From Octopus bimaculoides (taxonomy: Eukaryota): a stretch of DNA of 64,000 nt. The stretch is from contig NC_068988.1 of assembly GCF_001194135.2 (NCBI RefSeq), forward strand, positions 10,135,847-10,199,846, in the 5' to 3' direction. Under the pieces are notes generated by a model that saw nothing but the letters and a program-made list of their open reading frames with translations, ran no database searches and was not told the DNA's origin. Made by a program: the position numbers and the translations under genes. This document shows, one piece after another, positions 6,475 to 60,187 of this stretch (position 1 is the stretch's first letter; each line of letters begins with the position of its first letter).

Positions 6475-6520
<46 letters not shown>

Positions 6521-6618
6521 CACATTGCTTATATGCATGTTTGTATACATTTGTACACCCCACACACACGCGTACACACACAGAGAGACACAGATGTATA
6601 TATTCGTGTACGAGTCTT

Positions 6619-6653
<35 letters not shown>

Positions 6654-7329
6654 GTGAAGATCGATAGATATGCATATAAATATTGCATGTGTGTGTGAGA
6701 GAGAGACAGAGAGAGCGAGAGTGAGGAAGAAAGAGAATGACTATCTGTGTATATATAGAGTGAAGTGATATATAGATTTATACATGAAGAAAACGAAGAC
6801 AGGTTTGAAAGAAAGCTATTTCTACTTTTATTTTATGCATCAAAGCTTAGTGAAATCAAGCTGATTGCACTAACCTGATAATGACATGCTTCGGTATATT
6901 TTAATACGGATATTTGAAACATTAGGATATAATTTATGTCACAGGGCAGAAGAGGAGTAGTAAAGTTATTATTAAATTTCAGCTCTTTGTATGATAAATA
7001 CATTAGCATTAATTCTGGTTAAACTAGAGTTGACAGGTGTCGTTGAAGTGTTCCGATGAGAGGAGCGGGAAAAGATTATGTGATATGTTACCGACCGGAA
7101 AAAATTTCGAACTTAATTTCTTTGCCGTATTTAAATTCAAATTTTGTGATTGTATGAATAAGTTTTCCAGGTATATATGTTTAACAACTCATAGTTATAT
7201 TCAGAGATAGAAACTTATTACTTAAAGCCTTTTGTAAGCACCCTTGGACGTGTAGCAGCAACAAAAAATGGACTTGATACATCAGATAATTTCAGTCTAA
7301 TTTTTAATCAATCGTAATTATTAGCTCCA

Positions 7330-7446
7330 CCAATATTCTTTTTATGAGGCCACTGATATGAGGCCCACTTGCTAGATCAACTGGTTATCAAATAAAGCTC
7401 AATATTCTTATGAGGCCCACTTGCTAAATCAACTGGTCATAAAATA
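7330..7446. repeat. Local tandem duplication of about 58 bp
   Basis: TATGAGGCCCACTTGCTA(G/A)ATCAACTGGT occurs twice, each preceded by CAATATTCTT. Confidence 0.8.
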
Positions 7447-7671
7447 ATGCTGCTGCTGTTACTGTTTTTGCAATTATGCTCAAGACACCAAGAGAGAGCT
7501 CTCATCACACAGATACATGGTCAAAGTTCCTCCAGATATGACCATCCTGTCTTATTTTTCCAGGCATTGTGTACTAACTTTGAATACATTATCCAAGATA
7601 TAACTTTTCTTTGAAGACATTATAGTGAGAGTTCATGGTGATCTGACTGTTACTTCTAGCAAAGCTCATTC

Positions 7672-7735
7672 ATCATCACCATCATTTAACGTCTGTTGTC
7701 CATACTGGTATGGGGTGGATGGTTTGACAAGCGCT
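7672..7735 (-). mobile_element. Short 3'-end fragment of an RTE-type LINE/SINE
   Basis: CATCATCACCATCATTTAACGTCTGTTGTCCATACTGGTATGGGGTGGATGGTTTGAC resembles the reverse complement of a common octopus retroelement tail ending in (GAT)n; recognised from memory only. Confidence 0.45.
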
Positions 7736-7790
7736 GGCGAGCTGGCGACGGTGTTGTTGTTTATAGCTATATTTTAATCAATACACACGT

Positions 7791-8620
7791 CCCTTCCTCA
7801 GAACTTTCCAGGGAGTAATTAATCCCCATCCCTTTCCCCGGAACATACCAGGAAGTAATTCATCCCGCTCCTCCCCTTCTTCCCCTCATCGGAACTTTCC
7901 AGGAAGTAAATCATCTCCATCCTCCCCTTCTGACGAAGAACTTTCCAGGAAGTAATTCGACACCTCGTCCCCTTCCTCCTCCCTCAGAACTCTCCAGGAA
8001 GTAATTCATCTCCCTCCTCCCCTTCCTCAGAACTTTCCAGGAAGTATTTCATCCCCCACCTCCGCTTCTCCCTCCCCTCCTTGGAATATTCTAGGAAGTA
8101 ATTCATCCAACTCTTCCACTTTCTCGGAACTATCCAGGAAATGCTTAGTACCCCTCCCCTTCCCCGGAACTTTCCAGGAAGTAATTCATACCCTGCTCCC
8201 CTTCCTCGAAACTTTCCAGGAAGTAATTCATCCACTCTTCCCCTTCTCCGGTACATTCTAGGAAGTAATTCATGCCCCTCCTCCCATTCCTGGGAACTTT
8301 CCAGGAAGTAATTCATGACCCACTTCCCTTTCCACCCATCCTCCTTTTCTTCTCCTCGGAACTTTGCAGGAAGTAATTCACTCATCCTCCTCTTCCTACA
8401 CTTCTTCGGAAATTTCCCGGTAGTAATTAATTCTCCTCCCCCTTTCCTCGGAACTTTCCTGGAAGTAATTCATTCCCGGCCTCACCTGCCTCGGAAGTTT
8501 CCAGGAAGTAATTCATCCAGAACCCCTCCTTCGGAACTTTCCAGGAAGTAAATTATGTTCCTCCTCTCCTACCCTTCCTCCGAACTTTCCAGGAAGTAAT
8601 TCATAACCATCCTCCCCTCA
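7791..8620. repeat. Minisatellite, 18 units, conserved core GGAACTTTCCAGGAAGTAATTCAT with variable C/T-rich linkers
   Basis: 18 core copies counted by eye at roughly 40-65 bp spacing. The + strand linkers are CCT-rich. ORFs 7984-8385(-) and 8315-8551(+) are repeat translations. Confidence 0.95.
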
Positions 8621-9547
8621 AATTTCCCTCTCTGGAATGTTGAAGATTCATTCCTCCCCTTCACTCTCTTAAATACCCCTCTCTGGAAGCACATGACTAT
8701 AACTTTGTTTCTCAAAATACATCAGCAATGAGACTTGAAACAAGGATCCACTAGATTGTGCCTTAACTAAATTTAGAAAGATATATACCTTAATATATAT
8801 ATAGACTAATTGAATAAAAAAGCAATTCAACTTCTATATATTAAAATAAATATATATTTTATTTGAATATATAACCATTCTCTCTAATACTCACTATTCT
8901 TGCCTGTATTACTTCTCATATTTCTTTCTTTCTTTCTTTCTTTCCTTCCTTCCTTCCTTCCGTCGTTATTTCTCCGAGTCTTACAGTATTTGTATGTATA
9001 TACATGTGGGTGAAGCGTGTGTGTGTGTGAGTAAAACAGTTAACTTTTATGTACTAAATGTTGTATACGATAAATTGTTACATAAAATGTTTGTGTCAGA
9101 TGGAGCAGAAGAGCAAAACTTACCGATAAAACTCAGAAACAGTGAATTAGCAGCGGAGAAAGTTTCCAAGGAAAACGGAAAATAAGTTTCTCTGAACCAC
9201 GTTTCGGTAAAAATTAGAGAATGACAATTTGTGTCGGAGAATTGGGAGACATAAGAATGAATTTTGAACTTGGTGTTATCTGAATTGCATAACATATGTA
9301 CTGCAGATTTCAAGTATTATAGACAGGTTCACTCGTTAAGAAATATTACAGTACATAACTGGCTAATGTGAGTTTTCTTAACATATATTCAAGACCTGAC
9401 AAACTATCTCAAAAGAGCCTGTTGCATGAATTCAAAGAGTTCATTATTGAATTGCCTGTACGCTGTATGCTGAATTTGTATAGTTTCTGATACTTCCATG
9501 GGTAGTAGATTGACAAGCATAGTAAAATATATAGGTAATAAAATTAC

Positions 9548-9708
9548 CTGGATAAGGTACGAATTTGCCCATATGTATCCTCTATTTTGAAAAAAGGAAT
9601 ATTGAATTTACAATTAATATTTGTTGATATAATTGAAAATCCTATCTGGTAATACAACTTATCGTCTGAAGTATAATTTGTGCATGGCAGTGAAGTTGCA
9701 TGTGGTTT
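9548..9708 (-). CDS. Candidate coding exon, unknown product
   Basis: CATTCAG| acceptor, 161 nt open in one frame (KPHATSLPCTNYTSDDKLYYQIGFSIISTNINCKFNIPFFKIEDTYGQIRTLS), CAG|GTAATT donor. No recognisable homology. Confidence 0.2.
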
Positions 9709-9826
9709 CTGAATGTGATTACGTTTATGAAGAAAAATATTATATGCAATCAAAGAATGCAGAGAAATCCAAACAAGATATATTAAAATAAAATTTAAAA
9801 AAAAGAAAAAATCAAGCGTCTTTCTC

Positions 9827-9989
9827 AGACGCAGGTGTGGCTGTGTTGTATGGAGCTTGTCTACCAACCACATGGTTCCGGGTTCATTCCTACTGCGTGG
9901 CACCTTGGGCAAGTGTCTTCTACTATAGCCTCGGGCTGACCAAAGCTTTGTGAGTGCATTTGGTAGATGGAAACTGAAAGAAGCCCGTC

Positions 9990-10033
<44 letters not shown>

Positions 10034-10247
10034 ATATGTTTGTGTGTCTGTCTATCTTCCCCCAACATCTCTTGACAATCGATGGTGGTGTGTTTACGTC
10101 CCCGTAACAAAGCGGTTCGGCAAAAGAGACCGATAGAATAAGTACTAGGCATCCAAAGAATAAGTCCTGGCGTCGATTTGCTCGACTAAAGGCAGTGCTC
10201 CAGCATGGCCACAGTAAAATAACTGAAACAAGTAAAAGAGTAAAAGA
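9827..10247 (+). mobile_element. tRNA-derived SINE, family B (microsatellite-containing), full length
   Basis: Head GCAGGTGTGGCTGTGTTG...GGTTCATTCC (degenerate A/B boxes), body CACCTTGGGCAAGTGTCTTCT...GAAAGAAGCCCGTCG, central (TA)n, 3' half ending AAAGAGTAAAAGAG. Homologous to 46767-47382 and 55346-55520. Confidence 0.9.
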
Positions 10248-10742
10248 GGTTATTCATAACCGATTTTCTTATTCTGGAACATATTCTCATGTACTCTTCT
10301 GTCAATCGCATCCCGTTCTTCGTTAACGAGGAATCTAGAAATAGACATTTGCGAAAGCCATTGCCCGCAAGCAAAACAACATCAACACAGCAACAAGAAA
10401 CTATTGCCATTATAGGAACAAGCGTATGAATGACCGGATCGTTACTCATTAAAATTCTGGCATTAACACAAATGATTGCAATTTCATGTGACCCACAGCA
10501 TAAGGTTGAAATGATTTAGATGAATGATATTAGAGAATTTTGGAACTTGGAGCATTGAAATTCAAGTCCATTTCATTAACCGATATTAATACGGTGATGA
10601 TGACAGTTTGTGCTGTTTATATCATAAGGACTCTCAATGGCTTTGATGTATGTTTCATCAGCACCAGTTAAGAGAATTAATGATGTAATACTAGAAGATG
10701 TATGCAAGTGCATATTTGTGAATACGTGTGAGCGAGGATGCG

Positions 10743-10776
<34 letters not shown>

Positions 10777-10866
10777 CATATATACATGTGTGTGTAGGAG
10801 TGGGCGTGAGTGTATATGTATATGTATGTATACGTAGTTTCTATATATTCATATACGTACATATAC

Positions 10867-10901
<35 letters not shown>

Positions 10902-11321
10902 NNNNNNNNNNNNNNNNNNNNNNNNNNNNNNNNNNNNNNNNNNNNNNNNNNNNNNNNNNNNNNNNNNNNNNNNNNNNNNNNNNNNNNNNNNNNNNNNNNN
11001 NNNNNNNNNNNNNNNNNNNNNNNNNNNNNNNNNNNNNNNNNNNNNNNNNNNNNNNNNNNNNNNNNNNNNNNNNNNNNNNNNNNNNNNNNNNNNNNNNNNN
11101 NNNNNNNNNNNNNNNNNNNNNNNNNNNNNNNNNNNNNNNNNNNNNNNNNNNNNNNNNNNNNNNNNNNNNNNNNNNNNNNNNNNNNNNNNNNNNNNNNNNN
11201 NNNNNNNNNNNNNNNNNNNNNNNNNNNNNNNNNNNNNNNNNNNNNNNNNNNNNNNNNNNNNNNNNNNNNNNNNNNNNNNNNNNNNNNNNNNNNNNNNNNN
11301 NNNNNNNNNNNNNNNNNNNNN

Positions 11322-12619: not shown

Positions 12620-13165
12620 ACACTTGCTAGTTTGCACATACATAACGACACTAAGCACACGGCGAAGTCTACCAAAAGATGAATTGTCAATCGCAATATA
12701 AAATTATTAGAATGGCCAAGCCAGTCACCTGACTTGAACCCCATTGAAAATCTGTGGCGTTATTTGAAAATTGAAATTAATCCAAAAGCCCCAACGTGCA
12801 TTCCAAATTTGAAAAAAAATTGTCAAGAAGAATGGGAAAAAATTCCTAAAGAAACATGTAAGTCACTGATTAAGAACTACAACAAGTGATTGGTTGAAGT
12901 GGAACTGAATAATTGTTATGATACGAAGTATTAAATCAGAATTATCAGTTATTTATGTTCTGTACGAATACGTTTTTCACCCCTAAATATTTATAATTCT
13001 ATATAATTTCATTAGTTACTATAATTTATTAGTTTCTTTTGCATATTCTTACTTTATGCATGTATATGCAAATATAGTATTGGTATATCCTATTTATGCT
13101 CATTAGAAATTAACTAAATAAAGAATTTTGACATCTACGAATATTTATCCCCCCCCCCCAACTGT
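12620..13165 (+). mobile_element. Tc1/mariner (DD34E) transposon, 3' fragment with right IR/DR terminus
   Basis: Translation from 12643: [38 protein letters not shown]...CQEEWEKIP...KY*. It has the diagnostic [11 protein letters not shown] motif and two in-frame stops. It terminates ...CAACTG|TA at about 13165, with related TACGAATA...CCCC motifs near 12962 and 13136. Confidence 0.92.
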
Positions 13166-19005: not shown

Positions 19006-19650
19006 NNNNNNNNNNNNNNNNNNNNNNNNNNNNNNNNNNNNNNNNNNNNNNNNNNNNNNNNNNNNNNNNNNNNNNNNNNNNNNNNNNNNNNNNNNNNNNN
19101 NNNNNNNNNNNNNNNNNNNNNNNNNNNNNNNNNNNNNNNNNNNNNNNNNNNNNNNNNNNNNNNNNNNNNNNNNNNNNNNNNNNNNNNNNNNNNNNNNNNN
19201 NNNNNNNNNNNNNNNNNNNNNNNNNNNNNNNNNNNNNNNNNNNNNNNNNNNNNNNNNNNNNNNNNNNNNNNNNNNNNNNNNNNNNNNNNNNNNNNNNNNN
19301 NNNNNNNNNNNNNNNNNNNNNNNNNNNNNNNNNNNNNNNNNNNNNNNNNNNNNNNNNNNNNNNNNNNNNNNNNNNNNNNNNNNNNNNNNNNNNNNNNNNN
19401 NNNNNNNNNNNNNNNNNNNNNNNNNNNNNNNNNNNNNNNNNNNNNNNNNNNNNNNNNNNNNNNNNNNNNNNNNNNNNNNNNNNNNNNNNNNNNNNNNNNN
19501 NNNNNNNNNNNNNNNNNNNNNNNNNNNNNNNNNNNNNNNNNNNNNNNNNNNNNNNNNNNNNNNNNNNNNNNNNNNNNNNNNNNNNNNNNNNNNNNNNNNN
19601 NNNNNNNNNNNNNNNNNNNNNNNNNNNNNNNNNNNNNNNNNNNNNNNNNN

Positions 19651-30539: not shown

Positions 30540-30540
<1 letters not shown>
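30395..30540 (+). mobile_element. Family A SINE, 5'-truncated, with (TTC)n tail
   Basis: CTCAAATTCCACCGAAGG...GGGTCGATGAATTAA...GCTGGCTGTGTGCCTATAATAGAAAGGAT. Confidence 0.7.
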
Positions 30541-30834
<294 letters not shown>

Positions 30835-37585: not shown

Positions 37586-38042
37586 CANNNNNNNNNNNNN
37601 NNNNNNNNNNNNNNNNNNNNNNNNNNNNNNNNNNNNNNNNNNNNNNNNNNNNNNNNNNNNNNNNNNNNNNNNNNNNNNNNNNNNNNNNNNNNNNNNNNNN
37701 NNNNNNNNNNNNNNNNNNNNNNNNNNNNNNNNNNNNNNNNNNNNNNNNNNNNNNNNNNNNNNNNNNNNNNNNNNNNNNNNNNNNNNNNNNNNNNNNNNNN
37801 NNNNNNNNNNNNNNNNNNNNNNNNNNNNNNNNNNNNNNNNNNNNNNNNNNNNNNNNNNNNNNNNNNNNNNNNNNNNNNNNNNNNNNNNNNNNNNNNNNNN
37901 NNNNNNNNNNNNNNNNNNNNNNNNNNNNNNNNNNNNNNNNNNNNNNNNNNNNNNNNNNNNNNNNNNNNNNNNNNNNNNNNNNNNNNNNNNNNNNNNNATG
38001 TATGACGGGCTTCTTTCAGCTTCAGTCTAACAGTTCCAGTCA

Positions 38043-38464
38043 AAAATCCTCTGGGATTTTGATTTCCAAACAGACAAAGTGTTAGAGCAGCGAACGCCCG
38101 ATATTGTAACCTTTAGGAGGGACCAACAAGAACGCCTAATAATCGACGTAGCAGTGCCAGGAGATCAACACATTGGGATCGCTAACATGTGACAACTACA
38201 TAAGTCGAACATAATGTTTATCCCTATTGTCATCGGAACATTGGGTTCAATAACACCCAATCTGAAAAAGAAAAACATTGGAAACCTTAGAAATACCCTA
38301 CAATCTAGATGTATTGCAAAAGTCGGCATTACTTGGAACTGCATGCATATTGCATAGAGTATTGTCTGTCTGAGGTCCTTGTTATGAATTGACAAACAGT
38401 ACAAAACCCCGGTAGACATATCTTCAATGAACAACCTCACGATATTTTATACTGTAGGACGTCT
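38043..38464 (+). mobile_element. R4/Dong-type retrotransposon 3' end (subfamily D)
   Basis: KILWDFDFQTDKVLEQRTPDIVTF...LIIDVAVPGD (PD-(D/E)xK RLE core), then FIPIVIGTLG and LDVLQKSALLGTACILHRVLSV*. An internal deletion removes the K..KY segment. Followed by ATAATAAC and (CTA)n. Confidence 0.85.
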
Positions 38465-38471
38465 ATAATAA

Positions 38472-38542
<71 letters not shown>

Positions 38543-38725
38543 ATAATAATAATAATAATAATAATAACAACAACAGCAGCAACAATAATGGCAACAATAA
38601 CAACAACAACAATAATCATAATAATAATAATAGCAATAATGATAATAATAATGATGATGATGTTGATAATAATTATGATAATAATAACAACGATAACAAC
38701 AACAGCCAGCAACTACAACAATAAC
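38465..38725. repeat. Compound trinucleotide microsatellite (CTA, TAA, CAA/CAG, GAT)
   Basis: Directly visible. Confidence 0.95.
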
Positions 38726-40296
38726 AACACTGAATAAAGGAATAACGAAACAACATTCTTTAGAAAGCAAAAATATCTAGAGTTTTCTACAGATTTTCTA
38801 TAGAACATATAAAAATAATTCACGTATAAAAGTGCAAAAACGTAACAGATTACAAAGAAAACATGACATAATACAACAAACACGCATTCACAATATAATC
38901 AAACGATATGGAATACTATAAATATTACATCGAACATAACAAGGAAGACATAACAGGGAATAAATGATGAGGTAGAAAATTTGAGAAAGAAGTAAAGGAA
39001 CAATTCCTCAGAAATAACACAGGAATAAGTACGGGCAACAGATATATATAGGGTTCTATATATGGAGATGTGAATAACGTGAACAAAGAAGTTTAATTGA
39101 GCATAAAACAAGAAGCCAATAATGCCGAACATCCATATATTACGCGAGGAAAGGAGCAAATGTTGGATACTTGAATGGTTTTTGGATGTGGATTCCCTGT
39201 CTGTTCCGGAATGGAACGTTCGTGAGTTCGAAAATGAATTTCAACTTGAAATTGTTATATGATACGTGAGGAGAAGGTATAAAAGATGTTGCATGTAACG
39301 CAATTTGCGCACGCATTAACCCCCCCCCACCAAACACAAACACACACACACACACAAACACACACAAGTATATATACATGGCTGCGCATGTAGCATGCGT
39401 ATATAGATAGATACGTACAGACACAGAGGTGTATATATATATGTATGTATATATANNNNNNNNNNNNNNNNNNNNNNNNNNNNNNNNNNNNNNNNNNNNN
39501 NNNNNNNNNNNNNNNNNNNNNNNNNNNNNNNNNNNNNNNNNNNNNNNNNNNNNNNNNNNNNNNNNNNNNNNNNNNNNNNNNNNNNNNNNNNNNNNNNNNN
39601 NNNNNNNNNNNNNNNNNNNNNNNNNNNNNNNNNNNNNNNNNNNNNNNNNNNNNNNNNNNNNNNNNNNNNNNNNNNNNNNNNNNNNNNNNNNNNNNNNNNN
39701 NNNNNNNNNNNNNNNNNNNNNNNNNNNNNNNNNNNNNNNNNNNNNNNNNNNNNNNNNNNNNNNNNNNNNNNNNNNNNNNNNNNNNNNNNNNNNNNNNNNN
39801 NNNNNNNNNNNNNNNNNNNNNNNNNNNNNNNNNNNNNNNNNNNNNNNNNNNNNNNNNNNNNNNNNNNNNNNNNNNNNNNNNNNNNNNNNNNNNNNNNNNN
39901 NNNNNNNNNNNNNNNNNNNNNNNNNNNNNNNNNNNNNNNNNNNNNNNNNNNNNNNNNNNNNNNNNNNNNNNNNNNNNNNNNNNNNNNNNNNNNNNNNNNN
40001 NNNNNNNNNNNNNNNNNNNNNNNNNNNNNNNNNNNNNNNNNNNNNNNNNNNNNNNNNNNNNNNNNNNNNNNNNNNNNNNNNNNNNNNNNNNNNNNNNNNN
40101 NNNNNNNNNNNNNNNNNNNNNNNNNNNNNNNNNNNNNNNNNNNNNNNNNNNNNNNNNNNNNNNNNNNNNNNNNNNNNNNNNNNNNNNNNNNNNNNNNNNN
40201 NNNNNNNNNNNNNNNNNNNNNNNNNNNNNNNNNNNNNNNNNNNNNNNNNNNNNNNNNNNNNNNNNNNNNNNNNNNNNNNNNNNNNNNNNNNNNNNN

Positions 40297-46766: not shown

Positions 46767-47382
46767 TATTTATTTATTCTTTTAGTTCTTTCAGCCATTT
46801 GAATTCGTCCCCGATGAAGCACCGCCTTTAGTCGAGCAAATCGACTAAAGACTTATCCCTTGTAATCCTAGCACTTATACTATCGGTCGCTTGTGCCAAA
46901 CTGCTAGGTTACGGGACGTAAACACACCAGCATCTGTTGTCAAGCGATGTTAGGGGGACAAACAAGCACACACAAACATATACACACATATACTCACACA
47001 CATCCATCCATCCATCCATCCATCCATCCATCCATCCATCCATACATACATACATACATACATATATTTATATATACATACATACATATATATATATANN
47101 NNNNNNNNNNNNNNNNNNNNNNNNNNNNNNNNNNNNNNNNNNNNNNNNNNNNNNNNNNNNNNNNNNNNNNNNNNNNNNNNNNNNNNNNNNNNNNNNNNNN
47201 NNNATATGCGTGTATACACATGACGGGCTTCTTTCAGTTTCCGTCCACCAGATCCATCCCCAAGGCTTTGGTCTGCTCGAAGCAAACCAAAATCACTTGC
47301 TCAAGGTGCCACGGAGGGGGACTGAACCCGGAAGCATGTGTTTGGTAAGAAAGCTACTTACCACACATCCACTCCTGCGCCT
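46767..47382 (-). mobile_element. Family B SINE, full length, with central ATCC/ATAC/AT microsatellite and gap
   Basis: Head reverse complement CCACACATCCACTCCTGCGCC at 47362-47382; GACGGGCTTCTTTCAGTTTCCGTC; 3' half homologous to 10060-10247. Confidence 0.9.
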
Positions 47383-57245: not shown

Positions 57246-58719
57246 GGATTTATACCGGAGTAATATATATATATATATATATATATATGCATATACATGT
57301 ATGCATATACATGTATGCGGCTGAGTCGTAAGAAGCTTACTTTTCATATATATGGTTCCGTTTTCAGTCCCTCTGCTTAGAATCTTGAGGAAGAGTCTTC
57401 TAACTCGATAGCCCTTGGCCGACCAATTATATCTGGATAGATATATTAAACAGGAACTCCCATCCTCTCTGTGTGTGTGTGTGTGTGTGTGTTTGTGCGT
57501 GCGCGCATGCATGTATATGCATGTGTATCTGTACCCACCATGGCTTCACAACCTGTGTTGTTTACCACCCCCCAACTTCCGGTTTGGGTGATAAGGATTG
57601 CCCGAGATTAATTGTCAGTCTTTAAACAATTAGATTTGTTGTCGATTTGTTCCCCTAAACGATTCAAGTTGGTACCACATCATTCTGGCTTTGCAATGAC
57701 TGAAACTATTAAAAGGTAAAATTNNNNNNNNNNGCTTTGCAATGACTGAAACTATTAAAAGGTAAAATTTTGTGCGTGCGTGCGTGTGTGTGTGTACATT
57801 CATATGTATGTATTCTAGCACATGCCGATCTGTATGCGTAGATATAAGTGTATACATTTGTAAACATCAATATTATTTTCGTTTCAAGTATTTCAATTCT
57901 ATAACATTTACAGCTTAAAGTATGCGAAAAATAACTGCATTTGTCGTTGAATCTGCTTTCTATATTGGTTCAATTATTTCATGTTCGATTGAGTTACTTT
58001 ATCTCTAGTGATTATCTCGCAAGTTATATTCGTTATATTTACTTAATTGTGCACATTCTTTTATATTTTCTTCACGATACCTTCAATAGAACTAATTTAT
58101 TATTGAGACAGTATTTTTCTATGAATTCATTTGTATGAAGTGAATGTAAATATTTTCATTAAGTCTGCATGGCACACAGAGAAATCTGAACAATAGCTTT
58201 CATCCAAATATATAGCTATATAAGATTTAATATATGATGTAGCTGAAATAAATCTATTTGTTACAAGTGCTCTGTAAAGAATTCTTTATATAACATTTAT
58301 GAATCTATGAAATAACAATGCCTGCAAGAATGACAGTGGATTGTCTGAAATAGTGAACTTATTAATCCTATCATGAGATTATTATTTCTCTTATATCATA
58401 TGTTTAAAATAAAGTTATCTGCAGTCACGTTTCAAATTCAAGTTTGATAACTAATATTTCAATCACCGTTGATAAAATCCATTTTAAATTTCCTGTGTAT
58501 GACAAGATGATATTTATTTCATCATTTATATCATCAAATATTAATATACTTTCTGGTATTATATTACCTTATATAGAATATGATAACCTAGAAGATAGTT
58601 CGAGAATGACATATACATACCTTAACAGGTATTTCCATATAGGTATGCCAATGAACTAAGATGTAATCGATTCATCCCTTCGTCCAAAATTGCCACCCTT
58701 GTGGCAAAATTTGAAACCC

Positions 58720-58842
58720 TTCTTCTTCTTCTTCTTCTTCTTCTTCTTCTTCTTCTTCTTCTTCTTCTCCTTCTTCTTCTTCTTCTTCTTCTTCTTCTTC
58801 TTCTTCTTCTTCTTCTTCTTCTTCTTCTTCTTCTTCTTCTTC
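58720..58842. repeat. (TTC)n tract, about 41 units; (GAA)n tail of the adjacent R4 element
   Basis: Directly visible, one CTC interruption. Confidence 0.95.
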
Positions 58843-60081: not shown

Positions 60082-60187
60082 ATCATCGTCATCAACATCA
60101 TCATCATCCTCATCAAACATCGTCATCATCATCATCATCATCATCATCATAATCATCATCATCATCATCATCATCATTATCATCATC
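60082..60187. repeat. (ATC)n microsatellite
   Basis: Directly visible; source of the poly-His pseudo-ORF. Confidence 0.95.

What the first reader, a model, noticed from the sequence alone, without database searches (positions are those of the whole stretch)
7791..8620. 18-unit array with a conserved core stacking kappaB-like, STAT and ETS motifs between variable linkers
Seen: the core GGAACTTTCCAGGAAGTAATTCAT is much better conserved than the C/T-rich linkers, which vary in length and sequence. 12 of 18 units keep TTCN3GAA (including variants TTCTAGGAA and TTCCTGGAA), 15 keep GGAAGT, and 5 have exact GGAACTTTCC. Established: TTCN3GAA is the STAT GAS element, GGAA(G/A)T the ETS core, GGRNWYYCC-type sites bind Rel/NF-kB, and nGAAnnTTCn is the HSF unit. 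Inference: a homotypic cluster of overlapping immune/stress factor sites, acting as a repeat-built enhancer or factor sink. The G-rich minus strand might also form non-B structures.
Basis: partly seen in the sequence, partly recalled or inferred. Interest (0 to 1): 0.7.

Follow-up and report, generated by a model that had tools for sequence, protein, structure and literature searches.

The report
Old GGAA-rich 43-bp minisatellite
This is a real 18-unit tandem repeat whose unit happens to contain GGAA/TTCC half-sites that resemble STAT and ETS binding sites. The sequence gives no solid sign that those sites are under selection, so it is best read as an ordinary, ageing minisatellite until chromatin or binding data say otherwise.

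Summary
There are 18 head-to-tail units at 7784-8620, with periods of 40-65 bp. Each has a 24-bp core (GGAACTTTCCAGGAAGTAATTCAT) and a 16-41-nt linker that is 89% pyrimidine.

The 'conserved core, variable linker' contrast is mostly indels: 24-26 events in the low-complexity linkers and none in the cores. Substitutions differ only 1.6-1.8-fold (8.6% against 13-15%), which is borderline once the post-hoc choice of core is allowed for.

Within the core, mismatches are spread evenly. The kappaB-like decamer is the worst-kept part, and no unit has an exact kappaB site or an HSF trimer. Only GGAAGT stands out (nominal p=0.009, scan-corrected 0.11). Two cores are intact, against 2.1 expected from random decay.

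The STAT, ETS, kappaB and HSF readings all describe one arrangement, TTCC-tc-GGAA-ct-TTCC-a-GGAA-gt, amplified 18 times. The minus strand has no canonical G4, and the array has no i-motif and no H-DNA-type mirror repeat. No other copy lies in the window, and no eukaryotic genome could be searched.

Best reading: an old, strand-asymmetric minisatellite with no demonstrated function. An ETS/STAT tandem-repeat enhancer remains possible but untested, and has a mammalian precedent in the IFNB1-MRE.

The parts
7784..8620 (+). Whole minisatellite array: 18 units of core plus pyrimidine linker, period 40-65 bp, 48.7% GC in a window that is about 33% GC, and 34% purine on the + strand
7800..7823 (+). 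core of unit 1, AGAACTTTCCAGGGAGTAATTAAT (3 mismatches)
7840..7863 (+). core of unit 2 (2 mismatches)
7891..7914 (+). core of unit 3 (1 mismatch)
7937..7960 (+). core of unit 4 (3 mismatches)
7986..8009 (+). core of unit 5 (2 mismatches)
8029..8052 (+). core of unit 6 (2 mismatches)
8083..8106 (+). core of unit 7 (3 mismatches; TTCTAGGAA variant)
8126..8149 (+). core of unit 8, the most decayed (6 mismatches)
8166..8189 (+). core of unit 9, intact consensus
8208..8231 (+). core of unit 10 (1 mismatch)
8250..8273 (+). core of unit 11 (3 mismatches; TTCTAGGAA variant)
8293..8316 (+). core of unit 12, intact consensus, followed by the longest linker (41 nt)
8358..8381 (+). core of unit 13 (2 mismatches)
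8408..8431 (+). core of unit 14 (4 mismatches)
8450..8473 (+). core of unit 15 (1 mismatch; TTCCTGGAA variant)
8493..8516 (+). core of unit 16 (1 mismatch)
8533..8556 (+). core of unit 17 (2 mismatches)
8581..8604 (+). core of unit 18 (1 mismatch)
8620..8699 (+). Two strongly degenerate units at the 3' edge: ...TTTCCCTCTCTGGAATGTTGAAGATTCAT-TCCTCCCCTTCACTCTC-...CCCCTCTCTGGAAGCACATGA
   Evidence: Read directly. Below significance in the profile search, so this part is tentative.

Best explanation
The array is an old minisatellite with strong strand asymmetry: pyrimidine-rich on the + strand and G/A-rich on the - strand. A seed of about 43 bp was copied head to tail by replication slippage or unequal exchange. 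The seed is a pyrimidine tract followed by four alternating GGAA/TTCC half-sites, TTCC-tc-GGAA-ct-TTCC-a-GGAA-gt, and then AATTCAT. The copies have since decayed independently. The 'conserved core, variable linker' appearance comes mainly from mutation. The C/T low-complexity linker gains and loses bases by slippage, and substitutes somewhat faster, while the higher-complexity core does not slip. The STAT-, ETS-, kappaB- and HSF-like matches are properties of that single seed repeated 18 times, not 18 independent observations. No sequence-specific function is demonstrated. Shown here: the anatomy, the decay statistics and the absence of other copies in the window. Inferred: the mode of origin and neutrality.
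For: There are 18 units and no copy elsewhere in the window. Cores have 0 indels and linkers 24-26 indel events. Substitutions are 8.6% in cores and 13.4-15.3% in linkers. In a uniform-rate simulation, some 24-column window is at least as favoured in 23% of runs. Core mismatches are spread evenly (dispersion 1.13, chi-square p=0.30). The kappaB-like decamer has 1.9 mismatches per column against 1.29 for the rest. The non-motif tail AATTCAT (1.86 per column) does not differ significantly from the rest of the core (1.41 per column). Two cores are intact against 2.1 expected. TTCN3GAA is kept in 12 units against 10.5 expected, and GGAACTTTCC in 5 against 7.4. Identity between units does not fall with distance (0.70-0.73 at lags 1-9), so there is no higher-order repeat and no recent homogenisation. 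Jukes-Cantor distance from the consensus is 0.09-0.17, which means an old array. The array is 48.7% GC with 34% purine on the + strand, the strand asymmetry typical of classical minisatellites (my own knowledge). The surroundings are repeat-rich with no sign of coding sequence: no Pfam hits nearby apart from a Tc1/mariner remnant 4 kb away, no Rfam hits and no tRNAs.
Against: The core does have fewer substitutions than the linker (Fisher p=0.039 to 0.005, depending on the linker consensus used). GGAAGT is the best-kept hexamer, with 3 mismatches in 108 sites (nominal p=0.009, scan-corrected 0.11). A random 24-mer of this composition carries the STAT, ETS and 9/10 kappaB matches together only about 5 times in 100,000, so the seed is unusual, although those motifs were chosen after the fact. 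Tandem repeats full of ETS/SPI motifs can be real enhancers in mammals (PMC13373173). Neutrality cannot be shown without orthologous loci.
Confidence: 0.6

Rival explanations
1. The array is a homotypic transcription-factor site cluster, essentially the reader's idea narrowed to what the sequence allows. It would present about 14 ETS-type sites (C)AGGAAGT overlapping 10-12 STAT-type palindromes TTCC(N)GGAA, with extra GGAA cores on the - strand of the linkers. It would work as a copy-number-dependent enhancer, a repressed enhancer or a factor sink.
For: AGGAAGT occurs 14 times, TTCC.GGAA 10 times, TTCN3GAA 12-14 times and TTCN4GAA 9 times at linker-core junctions. GGAA+TTCC density is 67 per kb against 7 per kb in the rest of the window. 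GGAAGT is the best-conserved hexamer (nominal p=0.009). The core has no indels. There is a precedent: the human IFNB1-MRE tandem repeat carries 45 PU.1/SPI motifs that are necessary and sufficient for both repression and enhancer activity, and such clusters are conserved across mammals although unit sequences differ (PMC13373173). GGAA microsatellites also act as EWS-FLI1 enhancers (PMC6075149).
Against: The GGAAGT signal does not survive correction for choosing the window (p=0.11). STAT and HSF positions are not better kept than the rest (p=0.15). The kappaB-like part is the worst kept. Intact cores match random decay. There is no exact kappaB site and no HSE trimer. No gene or promoter is recognisable within the window. 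The motifs were picked post hoc and are four descriptions of one GGAA/TTCC arrangement. There are no chromatin, binding or orthologue data.
Confidence: 0.15
2. The array is the internal or subterminal tandem-repeat block of a mobile element, for example a non-autonomous DNA transposon or a Helitron-type element. It would then be one member of a dispersed family, and its core could serve the element, for instance as a protein-binding site, rather than the host.
For: The neighbourhood is full of mobile-element debris. SINE-like copies lie at 9827-9998, 47213-47382 and 57316-57426, and a Tc1/mariner DDE_3 remnant lies at 12683-12886. The stretch just upstream (about 7670-7760) resembles, from my memory only, a widespread cephalopod repeat. 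From my own knowledge, many mollusc satellites and minisatellites derive from such elements.
Against: There is no second copy of the unit or of either flank in 64 kb. The only inverted repeats found around the array are AT/TA microsatellites, not terminal repeats. No element-encoded protein lies adjacent. Nothing matched in the collections that could be searched, but none of those holds eukaryotic genomes, so the test is very weak.
Confidence: 0.18
3. The array acts at the RNA level. If transcribed from the + strand, each unit would offer a pyrimidine tract followed by CAG|G, which looks like a 3' splice site, and then GAA|GTAAT, a weak 5' splice-site look-alike. It could then be a cluster of cryptic splice sites or of sites for pyrimidine-tract-binding proteins in an intron or a long non-coding RNA.
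For: This rests on direct reading of the units. Single-strand folding is slightly better than shuffled controls (z=-2.2 and -2.5).
Against: There is no evidence of transcription and no Rfam match. The splice-site resemblance is generic. The folding z-scores are modest and are explained by GGAA/TTCC self-complementarity.
Confidence: 0.03
4. The array is an assembly artefact: short-read assembly collapsed or mis-joined copies, so the unit number and order are not real.
For: The window is a draft assembly with 14 runs of N, many next to repeats.
Against: There are no N bases within 6475-10901. The units differ enough from one another (about 71% pairwise identity) to be placed uniquely. The edges decay smoothly into unique sequence.
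Confidence: 0.04

Closest known systems
Classical minisatellites (VNTRs) with purine/pyrimidine strand asymmetry
   Same: Head-to-tail units of tens of bp, an array under 1 kb, variant repeats interspersed, higher GC than the surrounding genome, one strand purine-rich, and degenerate units at the edges.
   Different: Copy-number polymorphism between individuals, the property that defines a VNTR, cannot be tested here. There is no sign of recent homogenisation, so this array looks old and fairly static.
Human IFNB1-MRE and other MORC3-restricted tandem repeats, which are homotypic SPI/ETS, AP-1 or SP/KLF motif clusters (PMC13373173)
   Same: A tandem repeat with tens of GGAA-core, ETS-type motifs: 44 GGAA[A/G] matches on the two strands and 14 AGGAAGT.
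   Different: For the MRE, motif necessity, PU.1 binding, chromatin state and cross-species conservation of the cluster were all shown experimentally. Here none of these is known, and the sequence statistics do not show that the motifs are preferentially preserved. The organism is an invertebrate, and no nearby gene is recognisable.
GGAA microsatellite neo-enhancers bound by EWS-FLI1 (PMC6075149)
   Same: A high density of GGAA cores on one strand. A true (TTCC)n/(TTTC)n microsatellite also lies 300 bp downstream at 8921-8960.
   Different: Those are pure 4-bp repeats, and activity needs contiguous GGAA units and an oncogenic fusion protein. Here the GGAA cores are spaced and alternate in orientation within a 43-bp unit.
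The gypsy Su(Hw) insulator: 12 spaced copies of a short binding motif separated by variable spacers (my own knowledge)
   Same: The architecture: a short conserved core repeated about a dozen times with less conserved spacers, carried within repetitive DNA.
   Different: The motif and the spacer composition are different (AT-rich spacers there). That array belongs to a retrotransposon and has proven protein binding. Neither point has been shown here.

Membership tests
Minisatellite / VNTR | Head-to-tail tandem units of about 10-100 bp forming an array of 0.1-30 kb | tested here: met
   18 units, period 40-65 bp, about 0.83 kb
Minisatellite / VNTR | Interspersed variant repeats and strand compositional asymmetry | tested here: met
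   Mean pairwise unit identity is about 0.71. The + strand is 34% purine. GC is 48.7% in a window of about 33% GC
Minisatellite / VNTR | Copy number varies between individuals | not testable with these tools
   No population or second-assembly data. Exact-product look-ups found no other assembly of the locus
Homotypic TF-motif-cluster tandem-repeat enhancer (IFNB1-MRE type) | Ten or more motifs of one TF family packed in a tandem repeat | tested here: met
   14 AGGAAGT, 12 CAGGAAGT and 44 GGAA[A/G] matches on both strands in 837 bp
Homotypic TF-motif-cluster tandem-repeat enhancer (IFNB1-MRE type) | Motif positions preserved preferentially over non-motif positions, or across species | tested here: inconclusive
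   GGAAGT has nominal p=0.009 and scan-corrected p=0.11. All GGAA/TTCC blocks together give p=0.16. Mismatches overall are uniform (p=0.30). Cross-species conservation is not testable
Homotypic TF-motif-cluster tandem-repeat enhancer (IFNB1-MRE type) | TF occupancy, regulated chromatin accessibility and enhancer activity | not testable with these tools
   Needs ATAC-seq, CUT&RUN and reporter assays
STAT GAS element | TTCN3GAA palindrome | tested here: met
   Present in 12/18 cores and 14 times in the array. The full palindrome TTCC.GGAA occurs 10 times. This is a sequence match only
   0 exact matches to either formula on either strand. There are only 9/10 matches (7 on the + strand, 2 on the - strand). 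The decamer is the least conserved part of the core
Heat-shock element (HSF) | At least three contiguous inverted nGAAn pentamers in register | tested here: not met
   GAA..TTC..GAA and TTC..GAA..TTC both occur 0 times. Only the dimer GAA..TTC is present, in 12 units, and the third GGAA is one base out of register
ETS site | GGAA/T core with a favourable flank, e.g. (C/A)GGAAGT | tested here: met
   CAGGAAGT occurs in 12 units and GGAAGT in 15. This is a sequence match only
G-quadruplex, i-motif or H-DNA forming repeat | Four G3+ (or C3+) runs with short loops, or a homopurine-homopyrimidine mirror repeat | tested here: not met
   No canonical G4 on the - strand and no C3+ x4 motif on the + strand; only 9 two-tetrad G2 patterns. 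There are 8 pyrimidine tracts of 15-20 nt, but no perfect mirror repeat with arms of 9 nt or more and a spacer of 8 nt or less
Dispersed, mobile-element-borne tandem repeat family | Multiple genomic copies sharing flanks, with terminal repeats or target-site duplications | tested here: inconclusive
   There is no other copy in the 64-kb window and the only inverted repeats around the array are AT/TA microsatellites. The genome itself could not be searched

The most novel reading that the evidence does not exclude
The array could be an invertebrate counterpart of the mammalian tandem-repeat homotypic ETS/SPI enhancers such as the IFNB1-MRE. In that reading, a copy-number-tunable cluster of ETS sites overlapping STAT palindromes is kept silent or opened in immune cells and drives a distant gene. 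It would show that repeat-built motif clusters are an ancient, recurrent way to make inducible enhancers.
Probability: 0.08. Interest if true: 0.6.

Novelty: new member of a known kind. Interest (0 to 1): 0.2.

Why it matters
As it stands, this is one more minisatellite in a repeat-rich genome, and it matters little. The useful lesson is methodological. A conserved 'core' flanked by a low-complexity 'linker' is what slippage alone produces. Eighteen copies of one seed are one observation of a motif, not eighteen. If the ETS/STAT reading were confirmed by open chromatin, factor binding and conservation of the cluster in related species, it would extend the recently described tandem-repeat homotypic enhancers from mammals to a mollusc.

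Tried and rejected
Searches outside the window:
- A gapped two-core pattern against metagenome contigs gave 17 hits. All are unrelated collagen-like or other coding repeats with no core match.
- The same pattern and a 21-mer of the core gave 0 hits against viral contigs.
- The 21-mer gave 0 hits against bacterial and archaeal genomes.
- The 133-aa reading frame on the - strand of the array was used as a pseudo-protein to find other copies that might have been called as genes. It found 351 word candidates, none scoring E<=0.01.
- Exact-product look-ups for that frame and for a neighbouring 202-aa frame found nothing on record.
- None of these collections holds eukaryotic genomes, so the negatives say little.

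Searches inside the window:
- Rfam and tRNA scans found nothing.
- The inverted-repeat search around the array was swamped by AT microsatellites and showed no terminal repeats.
- Pfam on 20 stop-free segments gave only a Tc1/mariner DDE_3 remnant.

Literature:
- A full-text search for GGAACTTTCC returned only primer listings.
- Searches on octopus tandem repeats found no description of this unit.

Analyses set aside:
- The alignment-free 'purines in the linker' test gave p=0.002. I discounted it because 7 of the 18 linkers align a purine at one shared consensus position, so the ancestral linker was probably not all pyrimidine and the test overstates the contrast.
- A coding reading is rejected. 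Unit lengths are not multiples of three, and one frame on each strand carries a stop in every core.
- I did not verify the organism, because it did not justify another whole-database protein search. It fits the AT-rich, microsatellite- and SINE-rich draft sequence.

Full report
1. What is there.
The stretch 7784-8620 is a genuine tandem array. Tandem Repeats Finder reports overlapping rows of period 40-48, and 85/95 for pairs of units, from 7790 to 8618. It is the only repeat in the window with a period above 26.

A profile HMM built from the units recovers the same 18 at E<=1e-7 and nothing else in 64 kb. Periods are 40-65 bp. The linkers are 16-41 nt and 89% C/T.

At the 3' edge, two very degenerate units can still be read up to about 8699. 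The array is 48.7% GC, the window about 33% GC, and the + strand only 34% purine. That strand asymmetry is classical for minisatellites (my own knowledge).

2. Is the core really better conserved?
Yes, but much less than it looks.
- Cores carry 37 mismatches in 432 sites (8.6%) and no indels.
- Compared without gaps, linkers are only 67-74% identical to their consensus.
- The linkers are nevertheless homologous to one another (about CCCC[A/G]TCCTCCCCTTCCTC). With gaps allowed, their substitution rate is 13.4% or 15.3%, depending on the consensus used, with 24-26 separate indel events.

The contrast is therefore mainly indels in a low-complexity pyrimidine tract, where slippage is expected, plus a 1.6-1.8-fold difference in substitutions (Fisher p=0.039 to 0.005). 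The 'core' was defined after looking at the data. In simulations with one uniform rate, some 24-column window beats the rest at p<=0.039 in 23% of runs.

An alignment-free test, counting purines in linkers as transversions, gave p=0.002. I discount it because 7 of the 18 linkers align a purine at one shared consensus position, so the ancestral linker was probably not purely pyrimidine.

3. Is there a footprint inside the core?
- Mismatches per column fit a uniform rate (dispersion 1.13, p=0.30).
- The kappaB-like decamer (columns 1-10) is the worst-kept part, at 1.9 mismatches per column against 1.29. It is intact in 5 units against 7.4 expected.
- The STAT and HSF positions are not significantly better than the rest (p=0.15).
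- The tail AATTCAT belongs to none of the named motifs, and at 1.86 mismatches per column it does not differ significantly from the rest of the core (1.41 per column).
- Only GGAAGT (columns 12-17) stands out, with 3 mismatches in 108 sites. That is nominal p=0.009 but p=0.11 after allowing for the choice of hexamer.
- Two cores are intact, against 2.1 expected from random decay at 8.6% per site.
- Identity between units does not depend on their distance (0.70-0.73 for lags 1-9), so there is no higher-order structure or recent homogenisation.
- Jukes-Cantor distance to the consensus is 0.09-0.17. If the organism is an octopus, the calibration used for Octopus vulgaris repeats (JC 0.09 about 25 My, 0.2 about 56 My; PMC13282606) puts the amplification tens of millions of years back.

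I did not verify the organism with tools, so that date is conditional.

4. The motif reading.
The unit is best written TTCC-tc-GGAA-ct-TTCC-a-GGAA-gt-AATTCAT: four GGAA half-sites in alternating orientation. Any such arrangement is flagged at once by every dimeric factor family that reads GGAA/TTCC palindromes, so the four labels are not independent.

Tested against their definitions:
- STAT: met. TTCC.GGAA occurs 10 times and TTCN3GAA 14 times. The linker-core junction adds TTCN4GAA 9 times.
- ETS: met. CAGGAAGT occurs 12 times and AGGAAGT 14 times.
- kappaB: not met.
- HSF: not met. There is no three-pentamer element, and the third GGAA is one base out of register.

A random 24-mer of this composition carries the STAT, ETS and 9/10 kappaB matches together about 5 times in 100,000. 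The seed is therefore unusual, but the motif set was chosen after the fact from hundreds of possible factor families, and amplification multiplies one seed rather than adding evidence.

5. Non-B DNA.
The - strand has no canonical G-quadruplex motif, only nine two-tetrad patterns inside linkers. The + strand has no i-motif pattern. There are eight pure pyrimidine tracts of 15-20 nt, but no perfect mirror repeat with arms of 9 nt or more. Single-strand folding is only modestly better than shuffles (z=-2.2 and -2.5) and reflects GGAA/TTCC self-complementarity. That part of the inference is not supported.

6. Context.
The window is an AT-rich draft assembly with 14 N runs and about a hundred micro- and minisatellite rows. 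I found no convincing coding sequence anywhere in it.
- Twenty stop-free segments gave only a Tc1/mariner DDE_3 remnant at 12683-12886.
- There are no Rfam families and no tRNAs.
- SINE-like copies lie at 9827-9998, 47213-47382 and 57316-57426.
- Both flanks of the array are unique in the window, and the only inverted repeats around it are AT/TA microsatellites.

No gene or promoter can be assigned to the array.

7. Related sequences elsewhere.
None of the collections on hand contains eukaryotic genomes.
- The metagenome scan returned 17 unrelated coding repeats.
- The viral and prokaryotic scans returned nothing.
- The pseudo-protein search and the exact look-ups returned nothing.

8. Verdict.
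The best-supported explanation is an old, decaying, strand-asymmetric minisatellite whose core/linker contrast is largely mutational (confidence about 0.6).

The main rival is an ETS/STAT homotypic site cluster acting as a tandem-repeat enhancer. It is a known kind of element in mammals: the IFNB1-MRE has 45 PU.1 motifs (PMC13373173), and GGAA microsatellites act as EWS-FLI1 enhancers (PMC6075149). Here it rests only on motif matches and a borderline GGAAGT signal (about 0.15).

A mobile-element origin is plausible and untested (about 0.18). It concerns where the array came from, so it is not exclusive of the main reading.

Interest is low unless chromatin, binding or orthologue data change the picture.

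Noticed in passing
window 9827-9998 (+), 47213-47382 (-), 57316-57426 (+), partial 38008-38046: A dispersed repeat of about 170 bp, 69-79% identical between copies, with a tRNA-like B-box stretch (GGTTCCGGGTTCA). Each copy abuts a (TA)n/(AT)n microsatellite. It is probably a tRNA-derived SINE family, although ARAGORN and Rfam do not call it.
   Followed up: partly
window 12683-12886 (+): A degenerate C-terminal fragment of a Tc1/mariner transposase (Pfam DDE_3, E=4e-7; ...WPSQSPDLNPIENLW...). The upstream part of the gene is broken in all frames.
   Followed up: partly
window 8921-8960: A (TTTC)n(TTCC)n microsatellite lies 300 bp downstream of the array with the same strand polarity, so it reads (GGAA)n on the - strand. 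It may reflect the same local pyrimidine/GGAA-rich mutational environment that seeded the minisatellite.
   Followed up: no
window 7670-7760: Just upstream of the array lies (CAT)n-TTTAACGTCTGTTGTCCATACTGGTATGGGGTGGATGGTTTGAC.... From memory only, this resembles the start of a repeat that is very common in cephalopod genomes. It has no second copy in this window.
   Followed up: partly
window 7358-7448: A local direct duplication of about 38 bp (ATGAGGCCCACTTGCTA[G/A]ATCAACTGGT...AAATAA), two copies about 53 bp apart.
   Followed up: no
window 30540-30724, 58719-58842, 38473-38687, 60082-60187: Unusually long and pure trinucleotide arrays: (TTC)62 at 98% purity, (CTT)41 at 98%, (ACT)23 followed by (TAA)49, and (ATC)35.
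   Followed up: no
window, 14 N runs (e.g. 1464-2103, 10902-11321, 19006-19650, 39456-40296): Assembly gaps of 10-841 bp, many of them next to microsatellite or other repeat tracts. The window is a draft assembly, so repeat lengths near the gaps are unreliable. The array itself lies in gap-free sequence (6475-10901).
   Followed up: yes
window 7800, 7937, 7986, 8029 (column 1 of the core): Four of the five changes at core column 1 are G-to-A at the CpG formed by the linker-core junction (CTC|GGAA). CpG in the array is at 0.53 of expectation. This fits methylation-driven CpG decay rather than selection.
   Followed up: partly
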